From: Macrostomum lignano
Lineage: Eukaryota
Length of the DNA: 64,000 nt
Direction of reading: 5' to 3'
Assembly: GCA_002269645.1 (NCBI GenBank)
Contig: NIVC01001856.1
Coordinates: 165,695 to 229,694 of the forward strand
Part shown: piece by piece, positions 35,401-64,000 of the stretch
Numbering within the stretch: position 1 is the stretch's first letter
How the letters are laid out: each line of letters opens with the position of its first letter
Program-made: the position numbers and the translations under genes
The notes under the pieces: generated by a model
Databases searched by the model: none
What the model saw: only the letters and a program-made list of their open reading frames with translations
What the model was told of the DNA's origin: nothing

Positions 35401-37487
35401 ATTTGCTTTGCTTAAATCAGTTTAGCTTATATATTAAGCAAAGAACCATTTTGATTGACACAGCCATAACCAAACTGACTGATTGACTTCTATTAGCCGC
35501 AGTGACAGACAGGAAGGGTGCTGCAGGTCACAGCGGGTGACAGAGCGGGCAAAAAAGATCGGAAGCTAAAATAAGGTTATTTTTGCAGCACAGTTTTCTC
35601 CCAGCGGCTTCCGTGCACTTTCATCTCCCCAGAAATAGCGGGTCTTTTGCCGCTGCGACTCGTTCGCTACCCCCTCAGCCGCAGTGCAAATAAATTGTCA
35701 TCTGTCATCTCGTTTCTCATTTCTCATTTCCGATGCTTTGCTTTTTATTGAATTATTGAAATCCTTCCTTGAAGTGGAGTGCACGCAGCGGTGCACCACC
35801 CTTGTTATTCTTGGTGTTTTTGCCGACTGTCTGACTGTCCCGCTGCCTCTCCCTTCTCTCCCGCTGCCTCTCCCTTCTCTCCCGCTGCCTCTCCCTTCTC
35901 TCCCGCTGCCTCTTCCTTCTCTCCAGCTGCCTCTACCTTCTCTCCAGCTGCCTCTCCCTTCTCTCCCACTGCCTCTCCCTTCTCTCCCGCTGCCTCTCCC
36001 TTCCCTCCCTTCTCTCCCGCTGCCTCTCCCTTCTCTCCCTTCTCTCCCGCTGCCTCTCCCTTCTCTCCCTTCTCTCCCGCTGCCTCTCCCTTCTCTCCCG
36101 CTGCCTCTCCCTTCTCTCCCTTCTCTCCCGCTGCCTCTCCCTTCTGTCCCTTCTCTCCAGCTGCCTCTCCCTTCTCTCCCACTGCCTCTCCCTTCTCTCC
36201 CGCTGCCTCTCCCTTCTCTCCCTTCTCTCCCGCTGCCTCTCCCTTCTCTCCCTTCTCTCCCGCTGCCTCTCCCTTCTCTCCCTTCTCTCCCGCTGCCTCT
36301 CCCTTCTCTCCCGCTGCCTCTCCCTTCTCTCCAGCTGTCTCTCCCTTCTCTCCAGCTGCCTCTCCCTTCTCTCCCGCTGCCTCTCCCTTCTCTCCCTTCT
36401 CTCCCGCTGCCTCTCCCTTCTCTCCCTTCTCTCCCGCTGCCTCTCCCTTCTCTCCCTTCTCTCCCGCTGCCTCTCCCTTCTCTCCCTTCTCTCCCGCTGC
36501 CTCTCCCTTCTGTCCCTTCTCTCCAGCTGCCTCTCCCTTCTCTCCCACTGCCTCTCCCTTCTCTCCCGCTGCCTCTCCCTTCTCTCCCTTCTCTCCCGCT
36601 GCCTCTCCCTTCTCTCCCTTCTCTCCCGCTGCCTCTCCCTTCTCTCCCTTCTCTCCCGCTGCCTCTCCCTTCTCTCCCGCTGCCTCTCCCTTCTCTCCAG
36701 CTGTCTCTCCCTTCTCTCCAGCTGCCTCTCCCTTCTCTCCCGCTGCCTCTCCCTTCTCTCCCGCTGCCTCTCCCTTCTCTCCGGCTGCCTCTCCCTTCTC
36801 TCCCGCTGCCTCTCCCTTCTCTCCCGCTGTCTCTCCCTTCTCTCCCGCTGCCTCTCCCTTCTCTCCCGCTGTCTCTCCCTTCTCTCCCGCTGCCTCTCCC
36901 TTCTCTCCCGCTGCCTCTCCCTTCTCTCCCGCTGTCTCTCCCTTCTCTCCCGCTGCCTCTCCCTTCTCTCCCGCTGCCTCTCCCTTCTCTCCCGCTGCCT
37001 CTCCCTTCTCTCCCGCTGCCTCTCCCTTCTCTCCGGCTGCCTCTCCCTTCTCTCCCGCTGCCTCTTCCTTCTCTCCAGCTGCCTCTACCTTCTCTCCAGC
37101 TGCCTCTCCCTTCTCTCCCACTGCCTCTCCCTTCTCTCCCGCTGCCTCTCCCTTCCCTCCCTTCTCTCCCGCTGCCTCTCCCTTCTCTCCCTTCTCTCCC
37201 GCTGCCTCTCCCTTCTCTCCCGCTGCCTCTCCCTTCTCTCCAGCTGCCTCTCCCTTCTCTCTCGTCGCCTCTCTCATTTCCTATTGCCCTATTTCCCCCA
37301 CCTATTACATCTATCCATCTATCCCATGTCTCACCCGGCAGCATCCGCGTGTTGCCGCATGCAGGATCCGGGATCTCCGCAGCCCGTCGCCGACTCCTGT
37401 AGCCCCATCTGGCGAGTTTCGCTCACAAGCATGTTGATAAAGTTGGCTGCAGATTTAGCAGCCGCACTGTCAGTCAGTCCCTGCAGG
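26439..37487 (-). CDS. SCHIP1: Schwannomin-interacting protein 1 homolog (5' end not resolved)
   Basis: Phase-compatible exons 37487-37335, 34594-34222, 32499-32134, 30605-30495, 27710-27248 (acceptor uncertain) and 26734-26439. Motifs WRALEQRLAEL, ERERVLRAL, MELCFRND/MQLCFISD, RRRQAELQAEAQVALAQAEPMARMQLAVERH and [31 protein letters not shown] match the SCHIP1 C-terminal domain (human [74 protein letters not shown], from memory). Confidence 0.85.
26745..27228. repeat. 23-bp minisatellite filling the last SCHIP1 intron
   Basis: Unit GATGGGCTCAGTGTGGGATGGC(A/C). Confidence 0.95.
27917..28260 (+). mobile_element. tRNA-derived SINE, family A
   Basis: A box TAGCCCAGCGG and B box GGCTCGATTCC. The body is closely similar to 60447-60810 and (inverted) to 9420-9670. 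Confidence 0.8.
28656..29325 (+). mobile_element. 5'-truncated RTE-like LINE with an AT-rich (TTA/TTTA)n tail and a 13-bp TSD, antisense in a SCHIP1 intron
   Basis: FVYLGGLVPDVGDDLARRRGKAWAAFRSV..VETALLYNAETWTLT..RRLRLAGHV..IRDLALKRAI*, paralogous to 13680-15330. TSD TTTAATTTAGCAT at 28643-28655 and 29326-29338. Confidence 0.9.
30690..32070. repeat. 14/15-bp purine-rich minisatellite (intronic)
   Basis: Unit AGGGAGAG(G/A)TAGTG. Confidence 0.95.
32930..33478. repeat. 21-bp minisatellite (intronic)
   Basis: Unit CACATGAGAAGCCGTTATCTA. Confidence 0.95.
34615..35240. repeat. Adjacent roughly 21-bp and 22-bp minisatellites (intronic)
   Basis: GATGTCAGGG(C/G)TATTGGCA.. units to about 34770, then GGTACTAGGGAACCGGAACACA units at 34800-35240. 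Confidence 0.9.
35838..37262. repeat. 21-bp pyrimidine-rich minisatellite with a 9-bp subunit
   Basis: Unit CTGCCTCTCCCTTCTCTCCCG with inserted TTCTCTCCC. Confidence 0.95.
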
Positions 37488-38659
37488 CTGCAGTGAAAGA
37501 CGAAATTTATGCAAAATTTGTTGCAAGATTAAAGCAGAATATGTCTCTCCCGACTTGAACACAGTGAAGAATTCGCAAGCGCGGGTTTAAAGTGTCAGAA
37601 GATTTCAGTATTTGCAGTGCAGCAATTCTAAGAAAGCTTCAGATGCCTTGCAACAGATAAGCTTGGAGAGAGGCTGTGCAGTTTTGTCGGCTCTGCCATT
37701 TGCCACTGGACAGACTAAAGGAAAAAGCACTTGAATACTTAGGGCGAGGGATCTAGATAGAAAATTTCCCAACAGAATTGCCGATTGCTTATCCCCATTC
37801 TGCCCTCTCGGCCAGCTAATTGGATGAGGGGGAGGCTGACCCGAGCTGAGTGCTGGCCGAAAAAAGGGATAGATAAAATATGCGCGCACAATACTCATGG
37901 GAGGCGGCCTTGCGGTTGTCTGCTTTTAGATATGAGAGCATGAGAGCTATCGGAGATGGAGCTCAGAATCTGCACCAATCGGACTCATACACTGATAGTG
38001 ATAGCATTATTCAGTCAGACTCGGACTTGAGCGGAGTGGCTTCTTTATCAACTGGTCCTTGCTTCTTCTAGGAGCAATTTCTGTCTAGTCGGTGGCAGCC
38101 GGCCAGTCCAGACAGAACTGAATGAGATTCAGTCTGGGCCAGACGGGAGGCTGGAATTAAAGGACAAACTGGCGTGGGGAGCAGCCTACCCGGATGCAAT
38201 TTATATAGGAGAAGAGAAACTTTCCCCCTCAGTTTTATCCTATTTCGACTTTAACTTGAGTTGACTTGAGTTGAGTTGAGTGGCCTCTCAAACGTCTCCT
38301 TTCTGTCCCAGTTCGAGGAGGGTGAGAGAGAGAGAAAGCAAAACGAATAAACGTTCTCAGTCTCTTCCAACAGCTCCAGTGCTGTAGCAAATGAGTTTCC
38401 AATTCTTTCTACTGGTAAAGCTTGAGCCAAGATGGGTTCGGAGCCCTCTTCTTGCAGAAGCAGACGCAGGCCAGAAACGTAAAGCATATAATTTGGCGTT
38501 GCTGGGCAGGAAATACCAATCTCAAAGCCATCAGTATGGGGAGATTCTGGGGGATCAGGCAGGCGCGCCTGGCTTATCAACCAGGGATTTTTGTCCCCCC
38601 CCAACCTCTCACTGTCATGAATAATTTTGCACAGCAGTTGCAGATCCTGTTGGTCATGC

Positions 38660-39764: not shown

Positions 39765-40210
39765 AAGGAAGAAGTAGCGGTGTCTGCTGAATGACTGAGA
39801 GAAGGGGTAGCGGTGTCTGCTGGGTGACTGGGAGAAGGGGTAGCGGTGTCTGCTGGGTGACTGGGAGAAGGAGTAGCGGTGTCTGCTGAGTGACTGGGAG
39901 AAGGAGTAGCGGTGTCTGCTGAGTGATTGGGAAAAGGGGTAGCAGTGTCTGCTGGGTGACTGGGAGAAGGGGTAGAGGTGTCTGCTGGGTGACTGGGAGA
40001 AGGGGTAGAGGTGTCTGCTGGGTGACTGGGAGAAGGGGTAGAGGTGTCTGCAGGGTGATTGGGAGAAGGGGTAGAGGTGTCTGCTGGGTGACTGGGAGAA
40101 GGAGTAGCAGTGTCGGCTGGGTGACTGGGAGAAGGGGTAGCGGTGTCTGCTGGGTGACTGAGAGAAGGGTTAGCGGTGTCCGCTGGGTGACTTTGAGAAA
40201 GGGTAGCAGT
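39765..40210. repeat. 33-bp minisatellite
   Basis: Unit GTGTCTGCTGGGTGACTGGGAGAAGGGGTAG(C/A)G. Confidence 0.9.
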
Positions 40211-41159
40211 GTTTATTATTTCTCAGGACTTGTAAACTTGCAAAGGTAGAGAAAGTTTTGGTGTGAAACATCTCCCTTGTGCTTGGACTCTCCCCGCCTA
40301 GTACGCAGCTTCCTAAACCTCATCAGCCGTGACCAGGATTGAATTAGGAGGCTTTCATCGGATAGAAAGAGCGCTACTTCAAACAACTGGGTGACAGAAA
40401 CAGCAGTGTAATTCAATTCCGTACTGAGCCAGCGAAGAAGCCCTTCCGAGGTAAGTTATAGTTGAGAAGAAAAAAGTTGGGTGGGGATGTCAAGGGACAG
40501 ACCCTGAGACGGCGCAGTTTTGAAACCCGGAACTGCTCTCAAAGTGTTGCTGAGTGTCGTGCACTACATTGTGCACTTTCATTGGATAGTTTCTCTCAAT
40601 CCGATGTCTTTGACTTCTCTTACCCTGCTTATCTCTACTACCCCCTCAAGCCGGTCGCTGATTGGCTGGCTGTTGAATGTACATTCGCCCAAGGACCATT
40701 GTATATAACAGGGCGTAAAACTTAAAGATCATGTAAATCTTTAGGAGGTCGATTTCCTGGAAAAAATACACTGAGTAGATAGGAATAATCCCTTTTTCAA
40801 TCACAAAATTAATGATTTTGTTTGATCTAGGCAGTGAAGTTACCGTATTTATATTTTAATATAGCTGCTGGAGTGAAGTTTCTTCTCATATTGTTTTCTT
40901 TTTGTTTCATAAGCCTCAAGTTGCAAATACTCACAAGTAGCATTAGCTGAACTTTTGTTTTGCTTCTTTCTTGGATCAAGTATATTTGAAATAAAATTGT
41001 TGCATGCATGTTCTCGTAAACCATTATTGTAGGTTTAGCAGCTATCATAATTCAGGACAGTAATCCTTGCATTTGCCACCTCAGTAGGTGCCTCTGCATG
41101 CTGTGCTGATTGGCCAGTTGGTTTGATTGCATCAATGTTGTCTGCGAGGAGAAAGGTGG

Positions 41160-42728
41160 ATGAGAAGAGAGGAGAGGAGAGGGGAGAGGAGAGGAGAGAG
41201 GAGAGGAGAGGAGAGAGGAGAAGAGAGGAGAGGTGAGAAGAGAGGAGAAAAGAGGAGAAGAGAGGAGAAAAGAGGAGAAGAGAGGAGAGGAGAGGAGAGG
41301 AGAGGAGAGGAGAGGAAAGGAGAGGAAAGGAGAAGAAAGGAGAGGAGAGGAGAGGAGAGGAGAGGAGAGGAGAGGAGAGGAGAGGAGAGGAAAGGAGAGG
41401 AAAGGAGAGGAGAGGAGAGGAGAGGAGAGGAGAGGAGAGGAGAGGAAAGGAGAGGAGAGGAGAGGAGAGGAGAAGAGAGGAGGAAAGAGGAGAAGAGAGG
41501 AAAGGAGATGAGAGGAGAGGAGAGGAGAGGAGAGGAGAGGAGAGGAGAGGAGAGGAGAGGAAAGGAGAGGAGAGGAGAGGAGAGGAGAGGAGAGGAGAGA
41601 GGAGAGGAGAGGAGAGGAGAGGAGAGGAGAGGAGAGGAGAGGAGAGGAGAGGAGAGGAGAGGAGAGGAGAGAAGAGGAAAGGAGAGGAAAGGAGAGGAGA
41701 GGAGAGGAGAGGAGAGGAGAGGAAAGGAGAGGAAAGGAGAGGAAAGGAGAGGAGAGGAGAGGAGAGGAGAGGAGACGAGAGGAGGAAAGAGGAGAAGAGA
41801 GGAAAGGAGAGGAGAGGAGAGGAGAGGAGAGGAGAGGAGAGGAGAGGAGAGGAAGGAGAGGAGAGGAGAGGAGAGGAGAGGAGAGGAGAGGAAAGGAGAG
41901 GAGAGGAGAGGAGAGGAGAGGAGAGGAGAGGAGAGGAGAGGAGAGGAGAGGAGAGGAAAGGAGAGGAAAGGAGAGGAAAGGAGAGGAAAGGAGAGGAGAG
42001 GAGAGGAGAGGAGAGGAGAGGAGAGGAAAGGAGAGGAGAGGAGAGGAAAGGAGAGGAGAGGAGAGGAGAGGAGAGGAGAGGAGAGGAAAGGAGAGGAGAG
42101 GAGAGGAGAGGAGAGGAGAGGAGAGGAGAGGAGAGGAGAGGAGAGGAGAGGAGAGGAGAGGAGAGGAGAGGAAAGGAGAGGAGAGGAGAGGAGAGGAGAG
42201 GAGAGGAGAGGAGAGGAGAGGAGAGGAGAGGAGAGGAGAGGAGAGGAGAGGAGAGGAGAGGAGAGGAGAGGAGAGGAGAGAAGAGGAAAGGAGAGGAAAG
42301 GAGAGGAGAGGAGAGGAGAGGAGAGAGGAAAGGAGAGGAAAGGAGAGGAAAGGAGAGGAGAGGAGAGGAGAGGAGAGGAGACGAGAGAGGAAAGAGGAGA
42401 AGAGAGGGAGAGGAGAGGAGAGGAGAGGAGAGGAGAGGAGAGGAGAGGAGAGGAGAGGGAGGAGAGGAGAGGAGAGGAGAGGAGAGGAGAGGAGAGGAGA
42501 GGAGAGGAGAGGAGAGGAGAGGAGAGGAGAGGAGAGGAGAGGAGAGGAGAGGAGAGGAGAGGAGAGGAGAGGAGAGGAGAGGAGAGGAGAGGAGAGGAGA
42601 GGAGAGGAGAGGAGAGGAGAGGAGAGGAGAGGAGAGGAGAGGAAAGGAGAGGAGAGGAGAGGAGAGGAGATGAGAGGAGAAAAGAGAAGAGAGGAGATAA
42701 AAGGAGAGGAAAGAAAGGGAGAGGAGAG
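41160..42728. repeat. (GAGAG)n pentanucleotide microsatellite
   Basis: About 1.5 kb of GAGGA/GGAAA units. Confidence 0.98.
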
Positions 42729-43369
42729 TACTGTGAAATCCTGACACGGATCAAATAAGCCATGCTCGCACAGCAACAGTTAGGGAGCAAACAAAAGCCT
42801 AAAGCTTACCTGTTAGACAGCACGCTAGCTGGTGAGTGCGTTCTAAGGAAGTTGGCGGAAAGCTTGGCACCAGGAAGAGCTAATATAAAATTAGCTAGAA
42901 CAGGGCTTTTGCCAGTAACGGTTTTGCTGATTCAGACAAACTCTCTGCGCAGTTATAATAGCGCCTTTTCCTGTGCAGAAGGCGGCGCTACTACATGTGG
43001 CTACAAATAAAATTTGCAGGAGCAAATCTGGGTCAAGCGAAGCCTGCGAGCCGAATAAGACCCCGGACTGCCCCGTGGAAAGAGGCGAGGCAGAGAAGAT
43101 CGAGAGTCAGCCAGTGGCGAACGGATGCGTGGGCAAGGGGGAGGATTGGAGAAGTCTTATTTGGGGAGTTTGGATGGTACGAGAGGGATGCCTGCTACAG
43201 GGGGGGGGGGGGGGGGGGGGGCTCCCCCACACAGAGCTAAATTTAGAAATTGGCGTCACAGAATTTTTTGGCTCGATTCCAATTGGCTTGAATGGCCTTG
43301 ATAGCAGAAATATTGAAGGCGGAGCTTTGGAAAGGATAACAGTAGGGTAGGGTAGAGGGTATGAAGGGT

Positions 43370-43670
43370 CAGAGAGGATAGCAGTGCCCGCAGAAGGATC
43401 AGAGAGGGTAGCGGTGCCCGCAGAAGGATCAGAGAGGGTAGCGGTGCCCACAGAAGGATCAGAGAGGGTAGTGATGTCCGCAGAAGGATCAGAGAGGGTA
43501 GCGGTGCCCACAGAAGGATCAGAGAGGGTAGTGATGTCCGCAAAAGGATCAGAGAGGGTAGCGGTGCCCACAGAAGGATCAGAGAGGGTAGTAATGTCCG
43601 CAGAAGGATCAGAGAGGGTAGCGGTGCCCACAGAAGGATCAGGGAGGGTAGCGGTGCCAGCAGAAAGATC
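43370..43670. repeat. 30-bp minisatellite (G24 homopolymer nearby at 43200-43223)
   Basis: Unit GCGGTGCCCACAGAAGGATCAGAGAGGGTA. Confidence 0.9.
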
Positions 43671-44727
43671 CCCCCAATAAATAGGCAGACCAATCAAACT
43701 AGTGGTTAGTCATGGTCTCGCTCTCCCAGATGAAACGGCAGAATTCCAGTCGACTATCGATTAGTCAGTCAATCAGTCAGTTGGTCCAGTTGGACAAGTC
43801 GCCTCGGCCATTAGCAAAAGTGCATACAGCAGAATATATACGCTCGTACGAATCCTATCATCCGAGACGATGATGGCTTAGAGAAAGAAAGTCTTCTTAA
43901 AGTGCACCCAGACTCTTTATACAGCCAGTCTGGAGAGCGGAAGGCTAAGGAAAGTTGAACAATCCTACGCAATAGATAACAGCAATTGGTTCTCATATTC
44001 CCAACTGCACTCTTAAGTACAGACTTAAGTACAGTAGAATTTGTAAAGTACATCTAGAACTTGTGAAATCTTACAAAAGAGATGAGTGTTTTTGCCCTGA
44101 GATAAAGAGAGGGGAGAGCGGTATTATCATGATGGCGTTGATGCAGTTTTATGGCCCATTGCCAAATATGGAAATGTATGTACAAAAGGAAGACCAACTC
44201 GATGATGCAGACTCATAAACGGCTGTCATTTCAATCTCACAGATTTCTCATAGCAATTTCCCAACCATGGACTGGGGCGCTACACTTGCAAGTCTGATTT
44301 GCTAATGCCAATTTGTCGGCATGTTCTCATGAATAAAGAATTATGATAATGAAACCTGACCAAAGCCAACTAAGCAACAGCTGGCAAGAGAAAAGGCAAC
44401 ACAGTAGAAATAATTCGTCAATATTGCTTCACAGGAGCAGCACAGAGCAGTGGCTTGCTAATCATATTTTTGTAGTATTATTTATTTTGTCAACAGGTTT
44501 CAATTGATAGCTAAACGAAGTTACAAAATATTGCGCCAACTTGGGGGCATGCTCCACTCGGGATCAGAACAGGATTATTGAGCATTCGAGTGTGCTCAAG
44601 CCACAGTTAGGGCTAATAGTACATTATTAAATTTGCATAGAGATTATACGAACAAATTAAATTATTTAGATTATTAGAATGTCGAAGGCCAGTATGATGG
44701 CACGGAAACTACTCGTATCGGGTGCAC

Positions 44728-44988: not shown

Positions 44989-48633
<3,645 letters not shown>

Positions 48634-48747
48634 GGTAACCACTAGCAGTTTTAGCTTAGGCTGGACGGAGACGGACAGTCGGCAGTAGCGAGCAGAGCGG
48701 AACGCTAGGCGAGAGGAGATTGAAGCGAGCTGCGGGGAGGGCGGAAG

Positions 48748-49059: not shown

Positions 49060-49250
49060 GACCTAAGCTAAACTCTAATCTAAACTCAAAACTGAACTAA
49101 ACCTAAAAAACTAACTTAAAATGCAACCCTAACCTAAAACTAACCTTAACCTAAACCTAACCTAAACCTAACCCTGACCTAAACCGAATCCTACCCTAAA
49201 CCTAACCCTAACCTAAAACCTGATCTTAACCTAAACTCTATCCTAAACCA
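49060..49250. repeat. Degenerate telomere-like (CCCTAA-related) interstitial repeat
   Basis: Runs such as ACCCTAAACCTAACCCTAACCTAAAACC. Confidence 0.6.
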
Positions 49251-49951: not shown

Positions 49952-51373
49952 TCAGCTACTCAGGCACAAATCCAAGTGACCATTGATGTCGGACTCTGGC
50001 ATTTGCCTGCTGCAAACTGGACAGCTGACCAGCTGCTGGCTGACTGCTCCTATGCTGGCGGCGCCACCGACGCCATTAAGAGCGCCACTGACGCCCTTAG
50101 GAGCGCCACCGACGCCATTAAGAGTGCCACCGACGCCACTAGGAGCGCCACCGACGCCATTAAGAGTGCCACTGACGCCATTAGGAGCGCCACCGACGCC
50201 CTTAAGAGTGCCACTGACGCCCTTAGGAGCGCCACCGACGCGACTAAGAGCGCCACCGACGCCATTACGAGGGCCACCGACGTTGTTATAGCGAGAGCTG
50301 CCACCGCTGCCGCCAAGTCGAATGCCGACACCAGGAAATGCGGCATCGGTGGTGCCGACGGCAGCAGACACGGCGGCGCTAACAGAGTCGGCAGAAGCGA
50401 CGCAAACGGCGCCATCTGATTCAGCAATAGCAGGTCGCCAAGATTTCGACTCCACAGAACCTACAGAAGGATCTGGGCCGCTGCTAGCAGGCGAGGCGGG
50501 AATGAACTGCCGAATGTCCGTCTGTCCAGCAGCCGGCCGCTTCGCTGGCCGCTCCCGTTGCTCATCTTTGCCGCCGTCGGCAGCCCGACTATTCTTCTTA
50601 GCCAACGGCTTCTTCTTATCGGCGAATCCTTCGGGCTCCTTGACTTTGACGAATCGGCCGCCGCAGTCGGCCTGATGACTGCGCCACCAGGTGTCGTTAG
50701 GCCCGGGCGCCCGGTTCATGGACCGGCGCACCCAGCCGTGGAATGGCGGCCGGTTCCGGCAGGGCCCCTCGCAGCGCCACCAGTGCTGCTTGTAGACGGC
50801 GACCTCGTCGTGAAAGCTGTGATAGACGGTGATGTTGGTGCCGGCAGCCGAGTTGATGCGGCGCATGTGCGCCAGAAACTGCGGCCCGTGCCCGTCACGG
50901 TCGCGATTATTGGCGGTGACAAACAGGTGCGCGTGAATCATCTCGTGCAGCAGGGTTTCGACTAAGTCGCGTCTGGGCCGCAGTTTGAGCAGCGGCTCGC
51001 TCAGTTTAATGCAGCAGAGGCCGCCGCGGCCCTCGTAGCAGCACAGGCCGGCGCACAGGGTCATGCGGGGGCTCCACTTCACCTCAACTGCGACCAGGCT
51101 GCCGCCGAAGTAGCGCCCGTTGAAGTCCAGAAACAGGGCGTGCACATTGGGCGTGGGGTCCACCAGCTCCCAGTTGGGGTCCACTAGCGAGCCGCCCAAC
51201 TCGTTGCTATTGGCAACGGCTGCCTTGCCTCTCTGCTTCGAGTCATCCTCCTCCTGCTCCTGGGAGGCCAGGCGCAGGCACAGCTCTCGGTCGGCCGCCT
51301 CCGACTGCTGCTCCTCCTGGCGGTCAAGCAGCTCGGCTTCCAGCTGCCACTGAAGCGCCTCTTCTGGGCTCCA
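49952..51373 (-). CDS. SPRTN: SprT-family DNA-protein crosslink protease Spartan/DVC1 (start codon not found in the genome)
   Basis: One open exon from acceptor cttcag|51373 to the stop at 49952. WELVDPTP..KWSPRMTLCAGLC..LSEPLLKLRPRRDLVETLLHEMIHAHLF (HEXXH), GHGPQF, YHSFHDEV..HWWRCEGPC, PIP-like QTDIRQF, SHP-like FPGVGIRLG, C-terminal UBZ4 CPVC..INGHLDLCL. Confidence 0.95.
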   Translation of the reverse strand, partial: WSPEEALQWQLEAELLDRQEEQQSEAADRELCLRLASQEQEEDDSKQRGKAAVANSNELGGSLVDPNWELVDPTPNVHALFLDFNGRYFGGSLVAVEVKWSPRMTLCAGLCCYEGRGGLCCIKLSEPLLKLRPRRDLVETLLHEMIHAHLFVTANNRDRDGHGPQFLAHMRRINSAAGTNITVYHSFHDEVAVYKQHWWRCEGPCRNRPPFHGWVRRSMNRAPGPNDTWWRSHQADCGGRFVKVKEPEGFADKKKPLAKKNSRAADGGKDEQRERPAKRPAAGQTDIRQFIPASPASSGPDPSVGSVESKSWRPAIAESDGAVCVASADSVSAAVSAAVGTTDAAFPGVGIRLGGSGGSSRYNNVGGPRNGVGGALSRVGGAPKGVSGTLKGVGGAPNGVSGTLNGVGGAPSGVGGTLNGVGGAPKGVSGALNGVGGAASIGAVSQQLVSCPVCSRQMPESDINGHLDLCLSS

Positions 51374-51411
51374 CTGAAGAGATTGGAGAGAGATCTGGTT
51401 ATGCGAAACTG

Positions 51412-51665
51412 ATAGTATGTAACTATGCTAGTATGTACCTATGATAGTATGTAACTATGCTAGTATGTACCTATGATAGTATGTAACTATGCTAGTATGT
51501 ACCTATGATAGTATGTAACTATGCTAGTATGTACCTATGATAGTATGTAACTATGCTAGTATGTACCTATGCTAGTATGTAACTATGATAGTATGTACCT
51601 ATGCTAGTATGTAACTATGATAGTATGTAACTATGCTAGTATGTAACTATGCTAGTATGTAAGTA
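51412..51665. repeat. 16-bp minisatellite with alternating variants (32-bp higher order)
   Basis: TAGTATGTAACTATGC alternating with TAGTATGTACCTATGA. Confidence 0.9.
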
Positions 51666-51714
51666 TGCAATACCGCAATAGACTAATAATAATTGATTAC
51701 GCTTGCCCTAAAGG

Positions 51715-51983
51715 CCAGATGTGCAACCGACAGCTCAGTCGCAGCTATCGCGCGGCGCATCTGAAGGCTGCGTACGGCTGTTCAGTCCAAGGACTGGGGG
51801 GGTCGCCACACACACCCTCAATTACCCCAGCCAATGCTGGCACCCATTTTACAGCTGTGTGAACAGAAGCAATGCAGAGTTAAGTGTCTTGCTCAAGGAT
51901 ACAAACTGTTCCAGTGGGATCAGGAATCGAACCCCCCACCTTCAAGTCGTGAGTCCGACGCTCTGACCACTAGGCTACAACCC
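51715..51983 (-). mobile_element. tRNA-derived SINE, family B, with a CORE(MIR)-like domain
   Basis: Minus strand GTAGCCTAGTGG (A box)..GGTTCGATTCC (B box)..CCTTGAGCAAGACACTTAACTCT..CAGCTGTAAAATGGG, resembling the CORE-SINE consensus. Second copy at 60840-61105. Confidence 0.75.
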
Positions 51984-52384
51984 CTAGTTGCATGACTGCG
52001 ATAGACTGCAATAGACTGCAATGCTGCAATATATCATTGCATCCAATACACCCTCATTAACTACCTCGATCAGCCTTTATTAACTTGTAACTTACGAATA
52101 AAAAATAAATATTGATAACAATAACAATCGAGCTGCATACAGCATCTTGCGCTGAAATGCGGAAGACAAATGGCTATTTATATAATTTTTTAAACAGAAC
52201 TAGCAGACACACTAAACTGGCGTACGCAAAAAATGCACAGATACAAATTGAAGCCAAAGAAGCTTAGATAAGATACAAAACTATCGAAAAAGATTCCGGC
52301 TGATCCTCCCAGATGGAGCCGCAGTCTAGCTCGATTGCTATCGTAAAATGAGTATGCTTTTTAAACTTCACGATATCTTCTCAA

Positions 52385-52772
52385 CATTGGGGTGGGGGCT
52401 GGCGAGGGAAGGAAATGCAGCTGCGTACATTGGGGTGGGGTCGGTGAGGGAAGGAAATGCGGCTGCGTACATTGGGGTGGGGGCTGGTGAGGGAAGGAAA
52501 TGCGGCTGCGTACATTGGGGTGGGGGCTGGTGAGGGAAGGAAATGCGGCTGCGTACATTGGGGTGGGGGCTGGTGAGGGAAGGAATGCGGCTGCGTACAT
52601 TAGGGTGGGGGCTGGTGAGGGAAGGAATGCAGCTGCGTACATTAGGGTGGGGGCTGGTGAGGGAAGGAAATGCGGCTGCATACATTAGGGTGGGGGCTGG
52701 TGAGGGAAGGAAATGCGGCTGCGTACATTAGGGTGGGGGCTGGTGAGAGAAGGAAATGCGGCTGCATATATT
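52385..52772. repeat. 42/43-bp G-rich minisatellite
   Basis: Unit GCTGCGTACATTGGGGTGGGGGCTGGTGAGGGAAGGAAATGCG. Confidence 0.9.
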
Positions 52773-52907
52773 GGGATGTTGGCTGTAACAAAATGAGTGT
52801 TATGAGCTGAAGTTATAGGATTTACATACTATCTAAAACTAAAAATAGATCAGCCAGTCATTAGCAATTTTCCGGAATTCGCTTGATTATTAAAAGCTGT
52901 CCCGTAG

Positions 52908-55900
52908 TCACAGATTGTCCCATTCGATCAGCAGGAATCTCCGCTTGCTCAGCTTAATCAGCGAGGCGCCGCAGCCGGGCAGGACGCAGCTGTCGCGACT
53001 CAGCGGCGCGTCCAAAGCCGCTTTCGACTCCGCCGCCGACGTGTGACGCCGCAGATTCAGTGTGACCCGACCGGCGGACAATGCCTGATTCACCTGGTCA
53101 GGCGTCATCTGGCCGAGGCTTCCGTTGCCGCCATCCTCGGCTAGCAGGGACAGCAGCAGCTGGCGCAGACTGACGCCGTCGCGCCAAGCCAGGCGACGCC
53201 GACACGAGCTCAACCGGTCGCCGCCGCGGCTGGGACTTTCCGACAGCACGCCGGCGGCCAGGTCAGCCGGGGTCAGGCTGGCCAGGGCGGCGGAATCTTC
53301 GCCGAATAGTATGCTGGTCCACTTGCGGGCCGCCGCCAGCCCGGCTTCTGGAGGGATTGGCATGGTTTGGGACTGAGATAAGAGACTGTGTACGTGGGGT
53401 GGGTAGGTTGGAGTGCGCATTGGGGTGGGGGTGGGTGGGTTGTAGTGTACATTGAGGTGGGTGTATATGGTGGGGTGGGTGGGTTGGAGTGCACATTGAG
53501 GTGGGTGTATATGGTGGGGTGGGTGGGTTGGAGTGTACATTGGGGTGGGCAGGTTGGAGTGCACATTGGGGTGGGTGGAGCTAGAGTGTATATGAAAGGG
53601 TGGCACCGTACACTAATGTGATTACACAGACCGGGCCGCAGTATTAAGCGAATCCCTCCCAGCTCCCTCACCCCCATGCAGCAGCAATGTGACGCCATCG
53701 GCCAGCGTAGTCTGCGCCTCGTACCGCTCCGGCGCCGCTGCGTGTCGTTCGCAGAGTTCGGCCACCTGCCGATCACTTAAAAATGTGAATAGACGAAGCA
53801 AACGGCCCACATCGGCATCTGGCGTGTTGCGCAATCTCTGCAAAGCGGATAGAAAAAACAGGAGCCAGTCAGGTAACTTCTCAATGAACGTCTTAGAGTC
53901 ACTCGCGTCGCCCCAGAGTCGCTTCAGATGACGCAGGTAAAATAGAAAAGGAGTGACTCTTAAGCGACTCTAAAACGAGATGTCACGGTACAAGTGGCCA
54001 AAAAATCGTTAGAGTCGCCCAAGAGTCAATTTGAGGTGTTTTGTTGTCCGCCACTCTGAAGCGACGATCTGGGGCGACGGTATGACGACTCTGGGGCCGT
54101 GGAGTCATAGTTGAGGCGTGTCAGAGCCCCTGCCTGTAGAGTCACAGAGTTGTGCATTTGAAGATCGAAGCGCATTTGCGTCGCATGATGAAGTTAAGTC
54201 ACAGGTTTAGAAACACAGAACGATTCTTGGACGGCTCTTTCGCGACTCTTTTACAATTCTACAAATCACGTGACGCGCTTGTGACGCAATAGTCACCTCT
54301 CCGTCGCATTAGACGCGTTTGAGTCGCTAAAAAGTTACAAAACCCGGGATTTTTCAATGCCATTCACATTAATCAGCCTCGCACCTGGTAAAGCGCAAAC
54401 GGTGAAGTTCGCTCGGAGCTCAGCCACACAGTGTCGGCCAGTTGGTCGCTTTTGCCCAGCTTCTGTCCATCGCTGGTGGTCAGCAGCGGCACGGTCAGAC
54501 CGAAGGCGAGGACGCCTGACTGCTCGAAGCGGCGCAGGCAGGTCAGGCCGGTGTCGATGTTGCCGGTCTGGTCGTTGCCGCCGATCTGATAAATTGGATA
54601 TATTTGAAAGATATTTAAAGCTAGTAATTACCATACACGCCATGAACTTAAGATAGATTTAGGCACCAACCTGCACCAGACATCCGTAAGTTTTGTACAA
54701 GTGCAACCAATCGTAGGCTTGGAACAGAGGATAGAGAAACTCCTTAACGCTCATGCCGTGCTTAGAATTCAGTCTAGTCTGCACTGAGTGCTTGCCTAGC
54801 AGATCGTGCAGCCGAGCGCCGCTTAGCTGACCGGAAAGAAATTCTGTGGCGCTCAAATTGGCATGCCAGGACTGGTTGTTGAGGACTCTGTGCAAGGGTT
54901 TTAATGAGTTGCAGAATAACAAATGCACACACAATATACACACAATAAGAAATTATTTATTGACTTAAACGTATTTGTTTTCGGAAGTTTTTTTCTATCC
55001 ATATCTCAGTACTTAATCATTATCCTAGCGTTCTATACTTATCTAGGAATTTTAATATTTATCCAGGTATTCCGATCTTTATCCTAGTAGTTCAATCTTT
55101 ATCCGGGTATTTTCAATATTTATCCAGGCATTTCAACCATTATCCAGGTACCGGTAGTTCAATCTTTATCCAAGTAGTTCAATCTTTATCCAAGTAGTTC
55201 AATCTTTATCCAAGTAGTTCAATCTTTATCCGGGTATTTTCAATATTTATCCAGGCATTTCAACCATTATCCAGGTACCGGTAGTTCAATCTTTATCCAT
55301 GTAGTTCAATCTTTATCCAAGTAGTTCAATCTTTATCCAAGTATTAGTTCAATCTTTATCCAAGTAGTTCAATCTTTATCCGGGTATTTTCAATATTTAT
55401 CCAGGCATTTCAACCATTATCCAGGTACCGGTAGTTCAATCTTTATCCAAGTAGTTCAATCTTTATCCAAGTAGTTCAATCTTTATCCAGGTAGTTTCAA
55501 TCTTTATCCAGGTATTTTCAAACTTGATCGATGTATTATCAATATTTATTCAGGTAGTTTAATCTCTGTCCAGGTATTTTCAATCTTTATCCAGGTATTT
55601 TTTAATCTTTATCCAGGTATTTCAATCTTTATACAGGTATTTCAATCCTTATCCAGGTATTTTCAATCCTTATCCAGGTACTTTCAATCTTTATCCAGGT
55701 ATTTTTTATCTTTATCCAGGCATTTTAATCTTTATCAAAGGTGTAAGTCCTTATACAAGCGTTTTTATCTATCTTTATCCAAGTGGTTTAATCGAGACCC
55801 AAGACAGTCGGACTGTGACTGGCCATGTTAATACGAGTAGACACAGACAACAGTGGCCAATGGTATGCTTGTGATTCACAAGCAGATTAGCCGCCTAAAG

Positions 55901-56436
55901 TTGGAGCAATCCAAGGCTATTCAGCATTAAGATGCGCTCGTAAATCATCATATATTCCAAACCAAGCTAGCGATGACAGGCCAATCAGAAAATGTAAACC
56001 GTACTTCGTAATTCAACAACTTTTTCGTACAATTAATACAGCAACTGCGACTACCAATATACGCTAGCATTGCCTGGCAACTTGATTGATGAGGCGTTGG
56101 GAGGCTGGAAATTGGCGGATCGGCGCTGGGCCTGCGCCTATAGTCATCTATATTAGGAGCTAATAATAATAATAATATGGTAAAAACAATACTAATACAT
56201 ATCTTTTTTGTCTAACGCGTTCTAGCCAATTATTATTTACGAAAGTCCGAAAGTCGACAGTGCATTCTCAGCCTAGACTATTATAAGTATTATCTACAGG
56301 CGTATGCAATATTACACATAATTTCTTGCTTACTAAATGGTGTATAATACAAGCAGTAACACTTGTGCTAGATAACTAATCATCGGTCTATTTGGTTAGA
56401 AAGACTGTAGTACGATAGAAGTGGAGCCATGAAATC

Positions 56437-56495
<59 letters not shown>

Positions 56496-56500
56496 TACTA

Positions 56501-56549
<49 letters not shown>

Positions 56550-56576
56550 CTAAGACAGACAGACAGACAGACACTA

Positions 56577-56629
<53 letters not shown>

Positions 56630-57341
56630 AACAGACAGATAGACACTGCGGAACTCACACGGCCTCGCCCGGACGCGCCCCATCACAGCAGAAATATTTC
56701 CCATGATTATCCGCAATGCCGGCCAGCTGCCGTCCAATGCTCGCCGAATTTTCTTCGACATCGCGCTCGGCCAGCCGGACCCGGTCGGACATTCGGCCGG
56801 ACGGATCGCCGATTCGGGCGGTGGCGCCGCCGACAACAAAGATGGCGCCGTGGCCAAGCGAGCGCAGCCGCAGCAGGCCAACAATGGCCAGCAAATTGCC
56901 CAGGTGCAAACTGTTGGCCGTCGGGTCGAAGCCGCAATAGAAATAGCGACCGCCGGACGCCGAATTCAGGTATTCGTTAAAGTACTTCTCACTGCGGAGG
57001 GTGGGTGAGGTCAATTGAGGTCACATGAGGTCATTTAAAGTTAATTGAGGTTAAATGAGATCATTTGAGGTCAGGTGAGGTCAGTTGAGGTTAAGTAAGG
57101 TCATTTGAGGTCAGCTCGAATGAGCTCGTCTCCCTACACCCTTCCTGGTTCCGCCAATACACAATCCTGTACATGTCCACATTGAAGATAAAAATCGCAA
57201 GGCGACAAACCTTTTCAAAGGCAGCACAGCCTGAAAGCAGCCGCGATCAAGCAGTGCCCGGACCGATTCGGCCGCGCTGCCACCGCCAGCGGACAGACAG
57301 CGGCGGCACAGGCGGCCAGGTAAATTTATTATTGGGCGCAT
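52908..57341 (-). CDS. YARS2: Mitochondrial tyrosyl-tRNA synthetase, 495 aa, 6 exons
   Basis: Exons 57341-57211, 56991-56659, 54887-54671, 54585-54385, 53837-53672 and 53347-52908 (1488 nt, phases consistent). [16 protein letters not shown] (HIGH), [41 protein letters not shown] (KMSKS), basic N-terminus like a mitochondrial presequence, C-terminus [14 protein letters not shown]. Confidence 0.95.
53388..53580. repeat. Degenerate G-rich repeat in YARS2 intron 5
   Basis: Recurrent GGGTGGGTTGGAGTG(C/T)ACATTG motifs. Confidence 0.8.
55035..55765. repeat. Degenerate roughly 20-bp repeat with a thrice-repeated higher-order block (YARS2 intron 2)
   Basis: TTCAATCTTTATCCA(A/G)GTA units. The block GGTATTTTCAATATTTATCCAGGCATTTCAACCATTATCCAGGTACCGGTAG recurs near 55106, 55233 and 55383. 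Confidence 0.85.
56436..56645. repeat. (GACA)n microsatellite in YARS2 intron 2
   Basis: GACA tetramer array. Confidence 0.95.
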
Positions 57342-60839: not shown

Positions 60840-61105
60840 CACAGACAACTCGCTGGTTGAACATCGCAGGGAAAATGACGAGAAGGCGAGGCACAGAGCA
60901 ACTTGCACTTCGGCGCATTTGAAGGCTGCGTACGGCTGTTCAGTCCAAGGACTGGGGGTCGCCACACACCCTCAAATACTCCAGCTAATGCTGGCACCAT
61001 TTTACAGCTGGGTGAACTGAAGCAATGCAGAGTTAAGTGTCTTGCTCAAGGATACAAATTATTCAGAGTGGGTCGAGAATCGAACCCCTGACCACTAGGC
61101 AACAA
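60840..61105 (-). mobile_element. SINE family B copy with a deletion between the A and B boxes
   Basis: Colinear with 51755-51983 (GAAGGCTGCGTACGGCTGTTCAGTCCAAGGACTGGGGG..GTTAAGTGTCTTGCTCAAGGATACAAA). Sits tail-to-tail with the family A copy. Confidence 0.75.
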
Positions 61106-61689: not shown

Positions 61690-64000
61690 CGGGTGGATTT
61701 GAGATGGTTTTCATGCGGTGGATTTGAGATGGTTTCATGGCGGGATTTGAGATGGTTTCAATGGGGGGATTTGAGATGGATTCCAGGGGGGATTTGAGAT
61801 GGTTGTCATGGGGGATTTGAGATGGTTTCATGGGGGGATTTGAGATGGATTCCAGGGGGGATTTGAGATGGTTTCATGGGGGATTTGAGATGGATTCCAG
61901 GGGGGATTTGAGATGGATTCCAGGGGGGATTTGAGATGGTTTCATGGGGGGATTTGAGATGGTTTCATGGGGAGGATTTGAGATGGTTTCATGGGGAGGA
62001 TTTGAGATGGTTTCATGGGGGATTTGAGATGGATTCCAGGGGGATTTGAGATGGTTTCATGGGGGATTTGAGATGGTTTCATGGGGAGGATTTGAGATGG
62101 TTTCATGGGGGGATTTGAGATGGTTTCATGGGGAGGATTTGAGATGGTTTCATGGGGGGATTTGAGATGGTTTCATGGGGGATTTGAGATGGATTCCAGG
62201 GGGATTTGAGATGGTTTCATGGGGGATTTGAGATGGTTTCATGGGGGATTTGAGATGGATTCCAGGGGAGATTTGAGATGGTTTCATGGGGGATTTGAGA
62301 TGGATTCCAGGGGGGATTTGAGATGGATTCCAGGGGGGATTTGAGATGGTTTCATGGGGGATTTGAGATGGATTCCAGGGGGATTTGAGATGGTTTCATG
62401 GGGGATTTGAGATGGATTCCAGGGGGGTTTGAGATGGTTTCATGGGGGATTTGAGATGGATTCCAGGGGGGATTTGAGATGGATTCCAGGGGGATTTGAG
62501 ATGGTTTCATGGGGGGATTTGAGATGGTTTCATGGGGATTTGAGATGGTTTCATGGGGATTTGAGATGGTTTCATGGGGGGATTTAAGATGGTTTCATGG
62601 GGGGATTTGAGATGGTTTCATGGGGGATTTGAGATGGTTTCATGGGGGGATTTGAGATGGTTTCATGGGGGATTTGAGATGGTTTCATGGGAGATTTGAG
62701 ATGGTTTCATGGGGGATTTGAGATGGATTCCAGGGGAGATTTGAGATGGTTTCATGGGGATTTGAGATGGATTCCAGGGGGATTTGAGATGGTTTCATGG
62801 GGGGATTTGAGATGGATTCCAGGGGGGATTTGAGATGGTTTCATGGGGATTTGAGATGGATTCCAGGGGGGGATTTGAGATGGATTCCAGGGGGGATTTG
62901 AGATGGTTTCATGGGGGATTTGAGATGGTTTCATGGGGATTTGAGATGGTTTCATGGGGATTTGAGATGGTTTCATGGGGGGATTTGAGATGGTTTCATG
63001 GGGGATTTGAGATGGTTTCATGGGGGATTTGAGATGGTTTCATGGGGGGATTTGAGATGGTTTCATGGGGGGATTTGAGATGGATTCCAGGGGGATTTGA
63101 GATGGTTTCATGGGGGATTTGAGATGGATTCCAGGGGGGATTTGAGATGGATTCCAGGGGGGATTTGAGATGGTTTCATGGGGGGATTTGAGATGGTTTC
63201 ATGGGGGATTTGAGATGGATTCCAGGGGGATTTGAGATGGATTCCAGGGGGATTTGAGATGGTTTCATGGGGGGATTTGAGATGGATTCCAGGGGGATTT
63301 GAGATGGTTTCATGGGGGATTTGAGATGGATTCCAGGGGGGATTTGAGATGGTTTCATGGGGGATTTGAGATGGATTCAGGGGGGATTTGAGATGGATTC
63401 CAGGGGGGATTTGAGATGGTTTCATGGGGGATTTGAGATGGTTTCATGGGGGATTTGAGATGGTTTCATGGGGGATTTGAGATAGTTTCATGGGGGATTT
63501 GAGATGGTTTCATGGGGATTTGAGATGGTTTCATGGGGGGATTTGAGATAGTTTCATGGGGGATTTGAGATGGTTTCATGGGGATTTGAGATGGATTCCA
63601 GGGGAGATTTGAGATGGTTTCATGGGGATTTGAGATGGATTCCAGGGGGATTTGAGATGGATTCCAGGGGGGATTTGAGATGGTTTCATGGGGGGATTTG
63701 AGATGGATTCCAGGGGGGATTTGAGATGGTTTCATGGGGGATTTAAGATGGATTCCAGGGGGGATTTGAGATGGTTTCATGGGGGATTTGAGATGGATTC
63801 CAGGGGGGATTTGAGATGGATTCCAGGGGGGATTTGAGATGGTTTCATGGGGGGATTTGAGATGGTTTCATGGGGGATTTGAGATGGTTTCATGGGGGAT
63901 TTGAGATGGTTTCATGGGGGGATTTAAGATGGTTTCATGGGGGATTTGAGATGGATTCCAGGGGGGATTTGAGATGGTTTCATGGGGGATTTGAGATGGT
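61690..64000. repeat. 21-23-bp minisatellite with two interspersed variants (runs off the window end)
   Basis: GGATTTGAGATGGTTTCATGG(G)n and GGATTTGAGATGGATTCCAGG(G)n. Confidence 0.97.

What the first reader, a model, noticed from the sequence alone, without database searches (positions are those of the whole stretch)
51200..51400. SPRTN lacks a genomic start codon: in-frame acceptor fits initiation at the spliced-leader AUG
Seen: the frame is open from a strong acceptor (TCTCTCCAATCTCTTCAG|TGG at 51373, phase 0) through MIU-like helices (EEALQWQLEAE; ADRELCLRLASQE) into SprT. The first in-frame ATG lies inside the SprT domain (RMTLCAG). Upstream to the YARS2 stop I saw only minisatellites, a SINE and AT-rich DNA, with no convincing ATG exon. 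Established: flatworm spliced leaders end in AUG, and that AUG can serve as the initiator Met. Inference: SPRTN is SL trans-spliced, the leader supplies Met1 (M-WSPEEAL..), and it may be the downstream cistron of a YARS2-SPRTN operon. This depends on the organism being a flatworm.
Basis: partly seen in the sequence, partly recalled or inferred. Interest (0 to 1): 0.75.

Follow-up and report, generated by a model that had tools for sequence, protein, structure and literature searches.

The report
SPRTN start codon supplied by spliced leader
In this Macrostomum lignano (flatworm) sequence the DNA-repair protease gene SPRTN has no start codon of its own and almost certainly borrows the AUG at the end of the trans-spliced leader RNA. 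This mechanism has been known in flatworms since 2006, so the case is a tidy example rather than a discovery.

Summary
On the minus strand, one exon (51373-49952) encodes a complete SPRTN (SprT-like, zinc-binding domain, PIP-like motif, UBZ-type finger). It begins right after tctctccaatctcttcag|TGG. The frame closes 18 codons upstream at a TAG with no ATG in between. The first in-frame ATG is codon 104, inside the SprT domain.

The organism is Macrostomum lignano. Its single spliced leader ends in ...TTGCATG, and its trans-splice acceptor motif [T/C]TNCAG matches this site.

Three further lines support Met1 coming from the leader:
- Trematode SPRTN orthologues start M-W-S, and O. felineus has a genomic ATG there. 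The M. lignano exon starts W-S.
- GenBank's RNA-guided model of a near-identical copy is a 5'-partial CDS with no upstream exon.
- In a second copy, an annotated intron ends at exactly this acceptor. Its ATG exon lies in a mariner insertion that the window lacks.

The 1534-nt spacer holds no usable ATG exon.

I found no RNA read that proves the junction. The YARS2-SPRTN operon fits the published distance criterion but is untested. The mechanism is established (Cheng 2006) and acknowledged for Macrostomum, so novelty and interest are low.

The parts
49952..51373 (-). SPRTN single coding exon: 473 codons plus the TGA at 49954-49952. It starts TGG AGC CCA GAA GAG (W-S-P-E-E).
   Evidence: Translation. 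Pfam gives SprT-like 1.6e-30, SPRTN_ZBD 5.8e-25 and a weak UBZ hit. The product is 94% identical to M. lignano PAA54644.1, and every difference lies after residue 342.
51374..51396 (-). 3' splice site A1: agatctctctccaatctcttcag|. This is the inferred SL trans-splice acceptor, in phase 0.
   Evidence: The tract is 75% pyrimidine, and CTTCAG matches the M. lignano SL-acceptor motif [T/C]TNCAG. The intron annotated in paralogue L002 ends exactly here.
51350..51357 (-). Second in-frame CTTCAG|TGG (A2), 24 nt downstream. The exon would then start at 51349.
   Evidence: The upstream tract is only 35% pyrimidine. Use of A2 would give M-W-Q-L-E.
51428..51430 (-). In-frame TAG that closes the frame upstream. 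The 18 codons between it and the acceptor contain no ATG.
51062..51064 (-). First in-frame genomic ATG (codon 104, ..SPRMTLCAG..), inside the SprT-like domain.
51413..51668 (.). 16-bp minisatellite (16 copies) that ends 40 nt upstream of the acceptor.
51690..52010 (-). SINE-like element with a tRNA-like head at 51984-51915.
   Evidence: Rfam tRNA 28.2 bits, E 0.0027. A second copy at 60911-61088 is 90% identical.
52090..52095 (-). The only GT[A/G]AG donor consensus in the spacer (ttc|GTAAGT).
   Evidence: It lies 43 nt after the ATG at 52138, which is phase 1, so splicing to A1 or A2 would shift the frame.
52138..52139 (.). Empty TA target site. Paralogue L002 carries a 1.3-kb mariner here, which supplies the ATG exon of PAA67284.1.
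52384..52775 (.). 43-bp minisatellite (9.2 copies).
52908..57341 (-). Upstream gene: mitochondrial-type tyrosyl-tRNA synthetase (YARS2). ATG at 57341-57339, stop TGA at 52910-52908.
44989..48729 (-). Downstream gene: M3 peptidase (thimet oligopeptidase/neurolysin-like). Exons 48729-48299, 47626-46755, 46355-45892 and 45342-44989. The ORF is open from its own acceptor ccccgcag|CTC.
   Evidence: The exon chain was reconstructed on contig L001, where it equals PAA54643.1 exactly, and its boundaries were mapped onto the window.

Best explanation
The SPRTN pre-mRNA of this M. lignano locus is trans-spliced at the acceptor ...ctcttcag|TGG (exon start 51373). The partner is the species' single 35-nt spliced leader, CGGTCTCTTACTGCGAAGACTCAATTTATTGCATG.

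The leader's terminal AUG lands directly in front of TGG, in phase 0. It serves as the initiator codon, so the protein begins M-W-S-P-E-E-A-L. The genome itself encodes no Met1.

Shown here:
- the ORF structure;
- the absence of any usable genomic ATG;
- the identity of the species;
- the match to the acceptor motif;
- the N-terminal homology to trematode SPRTNs.

Inferred:
- that this acceptor receives the SL;
- that ribosomes start at the SL AUG.

The locus probably lies in a co-oriented cluster, YARS2 -> SPRTN -> M3 peptidase, that may be transcribed as a polycistronic precursor. I put that part at about 0.5.
For: 1. Species and SL. The product is 94% identical to M. lignano PAA54644.1, and the window is collinear with NIVC01002876. 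The SL sequence ends in ATG, and 30-39% of genes are trans-spliced, with conserved genes enriched (PMC8629364 and PMC5730564).

2. Mechanism is established. All flatworm SLs end in AUG, and that AUG can initiate translation. In S. mansoni it is in frame in 28% of trans-spliced mRNAs, and more than 40 cDNAs need it (Cheng 2006, as cited in PMC12582326 and PMC9851317). Wiberg 2023 calls the final ATG of the Macrostomum SL a translation start codon (PMC10468722).

3. Acceptor. CTTCAG fits [T/C]TNCAG, sits after a 75% pyrimidine tract, and is in phase 0.

4. No alternative start.
- The upstream frame closes at a TAG without an ATG.
- The first in-frame ATG is codon 104, inside the SprT domain.
- Two out-of-frame ATGs come before it.
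- None of the 26 phase-0 ATG exon candidates in the spacer has a GT[A/G]AG donor.

5. Homology. The three trematode SPRTN N-termini examined begin MWSDTE, MWSLEE and MWSSSK. In O. felineus the ATG is genomic (caATGTGGTCT). About 20 non-flatworm SPRTN N-termini do not start MWS. The M. lignano exon starts W-S-P-E-E, so Met falls exactly where the SL AUG would be.

6. RNA-guided GenBank annotation.
- The twin locus L001 has a 5'-partial CDS with no upstream exon.
- In L002 an annotated intron ends exactly at this acceptor, so the site is used in vivo.
- The three copies are identical across the last 800 nt of outron and the exon start.
Against: - No read or cDNA joining the SL to TGGAGCCC was available. 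Protein-database and contig look-ups found no transcript-derived entry, and a scan of metagenome contigs for the junction was empty, as expected.
- The motif [T/C]TNCAG is common. It occurs 9 times in about 1600 nt here, so the motif match is weak on its own.
- A second in-frame CTTCAG|TGG lies 24 nt downstream.
- The annotated partial CDS of the twin locus starts 27 nt inside the exon, so the published model does not pin the exact 5' end.
- The SL AUG has a poor Kozak context (U at -3, U at +4).
- One paralogue is annotated with a cis-spliced ATG exon, which shows the acceptor can also work in cis.
Confidence: 0.75

Rival explanations
1. Same mechanism at the other site. The SL is spliced to the second CTTCAG|TGG 24 nt downstream (exon start 51349), giving M-W-Q-L-E-A-E and dropping WSPEEALQ.
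For: A2 also matches [T/C]TNCAG and is also in phase 0. The GenBank partial CDS of the twin locus starts 3 nt after A2.
Against: The tract upstream of A2 is only 35% pyrimidine, against 75% for A1. Homology to the trematode MWS(x)EE N-terminus favours A1. The intron annotated in L002 ends at A1. Partial-CDS starts in this annotation are ragged: +3 and +15 nt for the neighbouring M3 gene in two copies. The +27 offset for SPRTN is therefore not informative.
Confidence: 0.07
2. A cis-spliced upstream exon that I did not recognise carries the ATG and is joined to the acceptor at 51373. It could lie far upstream, have a non-consensus donor, or lie inside a repeat.
For: GenBank PAA67284.1 (paralogue L002) has exactly such a model: MSSKTSSRSSGMRIGGIASTAGFTGCKP|WSPEE. 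Flatworm acceptors are often shared between cis- and trans-splicing (PMC12582326).
Against: That exon lies in a mariner insertion with a TA duplication and perfect inverted repeats. The insertion is absent from the window and from L001. In the window's spacer, all 26 phase-0 ATG exon candidates sit in minisatellites or the SINE and have weak donors. The one good donor is out of phase. The twin locus is annotated without any upstream exon. The trematode N-terminus M-W-S leaves no room for extra residues.
Confidence: 0.08
3. There is no trans-splicing. Translation starts at a near-cognate codon (for example the CTG at codon 11 or 15) or at Met104.
For: In-frame CTG codons exist at positions 11, 15, 31, 33 and 35.
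Against: Met104 would remove 26 residues of the SprT-like domain and the highly conserved SLVDPxWELxDPxP block. Two out-of-frame AUGs precede it. Non-AUG initiation is rare, whereas SL-AUG initiation is documented in flatworms.
Confidence: 0.05
4. This copy is a decaying duplicate in the neopolyploid genome and needs no start codon.
For: M. lignano carries several near-identical copies of the locus.
Against: The ORF is intact over 473 codons. Residues 10-341 are identical to PAA54644.1, whose annotated CDS starts at residue 10. All changes lie in the C-terminal low-complexity repeat, and the ATG-less 5' structure is the same in all three copies.
Confidence: 0.03

Closest known systems
SL-AUG-initiated mRNAs of flatworms (Cheng, Cohen, Ndegwa & Davis 2006, J Biol Chem 281:733; also called 'slORFs', PMC9851317)
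   Same: The SL ends in AUG, the acceptor is in phase with the ORF, no genomic initiator exists, and the SL AUG becomes Met1.
   Different: Those cases were shown with cDNAs and translation assays in Schistosoma and Stylochus. Here the junction and the initiation event are inferred from genomic sequence, homology and a published annotation.
Trematode SPRTN orthologues (O. felineus CRM22_002145, D. dendriticum, representative P0122)
   Same: The architecture is the same (SprT-like, ZBD, PIP-like DIRxF, C-terminal UBZ-type finger), and the N-terminus is the same (M-W-S).
   Different: In O. felineus the ATG is genomic (L003 3001). In M. lignano the corresponding position is the CAG of a 3' splice site.
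SL-resolved operons of M. lignano (Ustyantsev & Berezikov 2021) and C. elegans
   Same: The neighbours are co-oriented, the repeat-adjusted spacing is short, and the downstream genes begin at a 3' splice site.
   Different: No precursor RNA or SL read was seen here. The raw spacers (1534 and 1222 nt) are long and full of repeats. M. lignano has one SL and no SL2-type specialisation.

Membership tests
Flatworm mRNAs that take Met1 from the spliced-leader AUG | The organism has an SL whose 3' end is AUG. | tested here: met
   The window is M. lignano by sequence. The SL CGGTCTCTTACTGCGAAGACTCAATTTATTGCATG is given in PMC8629364.
Flatworm mRNAs that take Met1 from the spliced-leader AUG | [quoted passage not shown] | tested here: met
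   cttcag|TGG at 51373. It matches the motif [T/C]TNCAG.
Flatworm mRNAs that take Met1 from the spliced-leader AUG | No genomic in-frame AUG is able to give the conserved protein. | tested here: met
   A TAG lies 18 codons upstream with no ATG between. The first ATG is codon 104, inside the SprT domain. No usable ATG exon exists in the spacer.
Flatworm mRNAs that take Met1 from the spliced-leader AUG | The mature mRNA carries the SL at that acceptor. | not testable with these tools
   No M. lignano RNA reads or cDNAs could be reached. Indirect support only: a 5'-partial GenBank model, and an annotated intron in L002 that ends at this site.
Flatworm mRNAs that take Met1 from the spliced-leader AUG | Translation initiates at the SL AUG. 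| not testable with these tools
   Indirect support only: trematode orthologues begin M-W-S.
SPRTN / Spartan DNA-protein-crosslink protease | SprT-like metalloprotease domain with HExxH. | tested here: met
   PF10263 1.6e-30. HEMIH is present.
SPRTN / Spartan DNA-protein-crosslink protease | Spartan zinc-binding domain. | tested here: met
   PF22934 5.8e-25.
SPRTN / Spartan DNA-protein-crosslink protease | C-terminal UBZ-type zinc finger. | tested here: inconclusive
   PF18279 scores 20.1 bits, below the 26.4 cut-off. The pattern CPVCx(11)HLDLC is present and aligns with orthologues.
M. lignano operon (criteria of PMC8629364) | Adjacent genes on the same strand with a repeat-adjusted intergenic distance under 1 kb. 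| tested here: met
   The distance from the YARS2 stop to the acceptor is 1534 nt. Subtracting tandem repeats (256 + 392 + 38 nt) and about 280 nt of SINE leaves about 570 nt.
M. lignano operon (criteria of PMC8629364) | The downstream gene is SL trans-spliced, and a polycistronic precursor exists. | not testable with these tools
   No RNA data were available. Locus-tag numbering proved uninformative.

The most novel reading that the evidence does not exclude
SPRTN may be a case of 'start-codon outsourcing'. The ancestral flatworm gene began ATG-TGG-TC(N) (M-W-S), as trematodes still do in the genome. In the Macrostomum lineage a trans-splice acceptor replaced the ATG. An essential replication-coupled protease would then be translatable only after SL addition, which ties its expression to trans-splicing. 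The neighbouring M3 peptidase may use the same SL AUG to add a mitochondrial-type presequence, in competition with its own internal AUG. The three-gene cluster would then show two different uses of the leader's AUG.
Probability: 0.3. Interest if true: 0.4.

Novelty: new member of a known kind. Interest (0 to 1): 0.25.

Why it matters
The main value is for annotation. Gene finders and TransDecoder-type pipelines either label such genes 'partial' or give them a false N-terminus. PAA67284.1, for example, takes its Met from a mariner fragment. Recognising SL-donated start codons corrects the protein sequence to MWSPEE....

The case also gives a clean, testable example in the one flatworm where transgenesis works. 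A genomic ATG in trematodes corresponds to an SL-donated AUG in Macrostomum, which makes a small but neat evolutionary data point. It does not change what is known about the mechanism.

Tried and rejected
1. Direct RNA evidence.
- An N-terminal query carrying the in-frame SL peptide (VSYCEDSIYCM+WSPEE...) returned nothing.
- Exact look-ups of the window's product and of its TTG-ORF found no transcript contigs.
- A scan of metagenome contigs for the junction was empty.
- All of these are uninformative rather than negative.

2. Operon membership from the locus tags.
- I guessed that 'g2' and 'g3' meant the second and third gene of a transcriptional unit.
- A chimeric YARS2+M3 query returned nothing. 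Both plain-letter queries to that tool failed.
- I then rebuilt the M3 protein by an exon-chain search and it matched PAA54643.1 exactly.
- Its tag is Mlig009140g2, and a copy on another contig is Mlig009140g1. The suffix therefore numbers copies, and the idea is rejected.

3. Rebuilding the 494-aa GenBank YARS2 model failed. The homology-guided exon chain gives about 515 aa.

4. Supplementary tables of PMC5816591, PMC5730564 and PMC8629364 hold no entry for these genes.

5. There is no SL RNA gene in the window.

6. ARAGORN did not call the SINE head as a tRNA. Rfam scores it just under threshold.

Full report
WHAT IS THERE

The finding lies on the minus strand. Reading 51433 to 49950 in one frame gives a stop (TAG, 51430-51428), then 18 codons without ATG (HSYILSVSHNQISLQSLQ). 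The last of these codons is the CAG of tctctccaatctcttcag. The frame then stays open for 473 codons, from TGG (51373-51371) to TGA (49954-49952).

Pfam finds three domains:
- SprT-like (residues 78-185, E 1.6e-30);
- the Spartan zinc-binding domain (196-243, 5.8e-25);
- a sub-threshold UBZ-type finger at the C-terminus.

HEMIH and a PIP-like QTDIRQFI are visible in the translation. This is a complete SPRTN in a single exon.

The first in-frame ATG is codon 104 (51064-51062), inside the SprT domain. It lies after the block SLVDPNWELVDPTPNVHALF, which is conserved across animal SPRTNs. Two out-of-frame ATGs (51246, 51147) come first.

WHOSE GENOME

The best database match is Macrostomum lignano PAA54644.1 (94% identity, annotated 'partial'). 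Its cluster mate is PAA67284.1. The window is collinear over more than 20 kb with contig NIVC01002876 (locus L001) at 94-97% identity. All protein differences lie after residue 342, in a coding 42-bp minisatellite. The window is thus a further copy, or an allele, of this locus in the neopolyploid M. lignano genome. The condition 'this depends on the organism being a flatworm' is met.

THE NEIGHBOURS

Upstream on the same strand is a bacterial-type, hence mitochondrial, tyrosyl-tRNA synthetase. Its ATG is at 57341 and its stop at 52910-52908. TIGR00234 scores 250 bits and PF00579 gives 2e-61.

Downstream on the same strand is an M3 peptidase of the thimet oligopeptidase/neurolysin type (48729-44989, PF01432 9.5e-144). 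I rebuilt its four-exon CDS on contig L001, where it equals PAA54643.1 residue for residue, and mapped the exon boundaries onto the window.

The 1534-nt spacer between YARS2 and SPRTN contains:
- a 43-bp minisatellite (52775-52384);
- a SINE with a tRNA-like head (51984-51915; a second copy lies at 60911-61088);
- a 16-bp minisatellite (51668-51413) that ends 40 nt before the acceptor.

IS THERE A GENOMIC START AFTER ALL?

I enumerated every ATG in the spacer that runs without a stop into a GT in phase 0 and found 26 candidates. All lie in the minisatellite or the SINE, with donors such as GTACGC, GTATGC and GTTAAT. The species' cis-donor consensus is GT[G/A]AG (PMC8629364). It occurs once in the spacer (GT at 52095), 43 nt after the nearest ATG (52138), so it is out of phase.

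GenBank does give one paralogue (PAA67284.1, locus L002) an upstream ATG exon: MSSKTSSRSSGMRIGGIASTAGFTGCKP|WSPEE. That exon is an out-of-frame piece of a mariner transposase ORF. The mariner is a clean 1.3-kb insertion (L002 8879-10187) with perfect inverted repeats and a TA duplication. The window and L001 have the empty site (TA at 52139-52138), and the exon sequence is absent from the window.

This model does not supply a start codon here. It is still useful, because its annotated intron ends exactly at cag|TGGAGC. The annotation was built only from RNA-seq and de novo transcripts (PMC5730564). The site at 51373 is therefore a 3' splice site used in vivo.

WHY THE SPLICED LEADER

M. lignano has a single 35-nt SL, CGGTCTCTTACTGCGAAGACTCAATTTATTGCATG. 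Between 30 and 39% of its genes are trans-spliced, conserved genes preferentially so. The motif at trans-splice acceptors is [T/C]TNCAG (PMC8629364 and PMC5730564). The site here reads CTTCAG after a 75% pyrimidine tract and is in phase 0.

All flatworm SLs end in AUG, and that AUG is a proven initiator. In S. mansoni it is in frame in 28% of trans-spliced mRNAs, and more than 40 cDNAs depend on it (Cheng et al. 2006, as cited in PMC12582326 and PMC9851317). For Macrostomum, Wiberg et al. 2023 explicitly call the SL's final ATG a translation start codon.

The GenBank model of the twin locus L001 is a 5'-partial CDS with no upstream exon. This is what a pipeline produces when it trims the SL before ORF calling.

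The most specific support is comparative. The three trematode SPRTNs examined begin MWSDTE (O. felineus), MWSLEE (D. dendriticum) and MWSSSK (representative P0122). In O. felineus the ATG is in the genome (..ctaatctcaATGTGGTCT). About twenty non-flatworm SPRTN N-termini begin differently, mostly M..D-phi-x-LALxLQ. The M. lignano exon begins W-S-P-E-E. The one missing residue is Met, at exactly the position where the SL AUG would be joined.

CAVEATS

- I could not reach any M. lignano read or cDNA, so the SL junction and the initiation event remain inferred.
- The acceptor motif is common, with 9 hits in about 1600 nt.
- A second in-frame CTTCAG|TGG lies 24 nt downstream (exon start 51349) and would give M-W-Q-L-E. 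Its upstream tract is purine-rich, and homology favours the first site.
- The annotated partial CDS of L001 starts 27 nt inside the exon. The neighbouring M3 gene shows offsets of +3 and +15 nt in two copies, so these starts are ragged and do not identify the splice site.

THE OPERON

YARS2, SPRTN and the M3 peptidase are co-oriented. Subtracting tandem repeats and the SINE leaves about 570 nt between the YARS2 stop and the SPRTN acceptor. This is under the 1-kb repeat-adjusted threshold that Ustyantsev and Berezikov use to call operons. That criterion also requires the downstream gene to be SL trans-spliced, which I could not show.

I tried to use the locus tags (g2, g3) as evidence of position in a transcriptional unit. 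This failed: M3 copies on different contigs are Mlig009140g1 and g2, so the suffix numbers copies. The operon is plausible, at about 0.5, and untested.

VERDICT

It is an instance of a mechanism established in 2006 and already acknowledged for this genus. It is a new member of a known kind and is mainly of value for annotation. Interest is 0.25.

Noticed in passing
window 48729-48631 (minus strand): The ORF of the downstream M3 peptidase is open for 31 codons from its own acceptor (ccccgcag|CTC, exon start 48729) to the genomic ATG (48633-48631). The SL AUG would be in frame and would add MLASISSRLAFRSARYCRLSVSVQPKLKLLVVT (6 K/R, no D/E), which looks like a mitochondrial presequence. This could give two isoforms, a mitochondrial one from the SL AUG and a cytosolic one from the internal AUG. 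All four GenBank copies are annotated 'partial', and UniRef A0A1I8IPD8 starts exactly at the first codon after the acceptor.
   Followed up: partly
L002 8879-10187; empty site at window 52139-52138: A paralogue-specific mariner insertion (TA duplication, perfect inverted repeats ACGAGGGTCACTCAGAAAGT, intact-looking transposase ORF). GenBank PAA67284.1 takes its first 28 residues from an out-of-frame stretch of that transposase. This is either TE exonisation or an annotation artefact.
   Followed up: yes
window 50061-50282: A coding 42-bp minisatellite (GVGGAPNGVSGTLN-type units) lies in the C-terminal linker of SPRTN. It varies in sequence and copy number between genomic copies and accounts for nearly all of the 6% protein divergence.
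   Followed up: partly
window 49080-49249: Degenerate CCCTAA/TTAGGG-like (telomere-type) repeats in the spacer between SPRTN and the M3 peptidase.
   Followed up: no
window 51690-52010 and 60911-61088: Two copies (90% identical) of a SINE-like element with a tRNA-like head. Rfam tRNA scores 28.2 bits, just under threshold, and ARAGORN gives no call.
   Followed up: partly
window 52384-52775 and 53396-53590: The 43-bp intergenic minisatellite and the 22-44-bp repeats in the last YARS2 intron share a CCCACCCCAATGTRCRC core. They look like related minisatellite families.
   Followed up: no
L001 4201-8441 (window 57341-52908): The GenBank YARS2 model (494 aa) starts at L001 4204, immediately after a genomic ATG (4201-4203). 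It is shorter than the homology-guided exon chain (about 515 aa), so the deposited model probably has a mis-set start and an odd splice.
   Followed up: partly
L003 2940-3010 (O. felineus SPRTN 5' end): Two good 3' splice sites (ttccttctctcag| and ccttgaccag|) lie just upstream of the genomic ATG of the trematode gene. The nearer one is 9 nt before the ATG and in frame. The trematode gene may also be trans-spliced close to its start codon.
   Followed up: no
window 16000-18000, 30000-32000, 36000-38000, 40000-44000, 62000-64000: Blocks with extreme GC or AT skew, and 'ORFs' of about 500 codons open in several frames on both strands. They are probably long satellite or minisatellite arrays.
   Followed up: no
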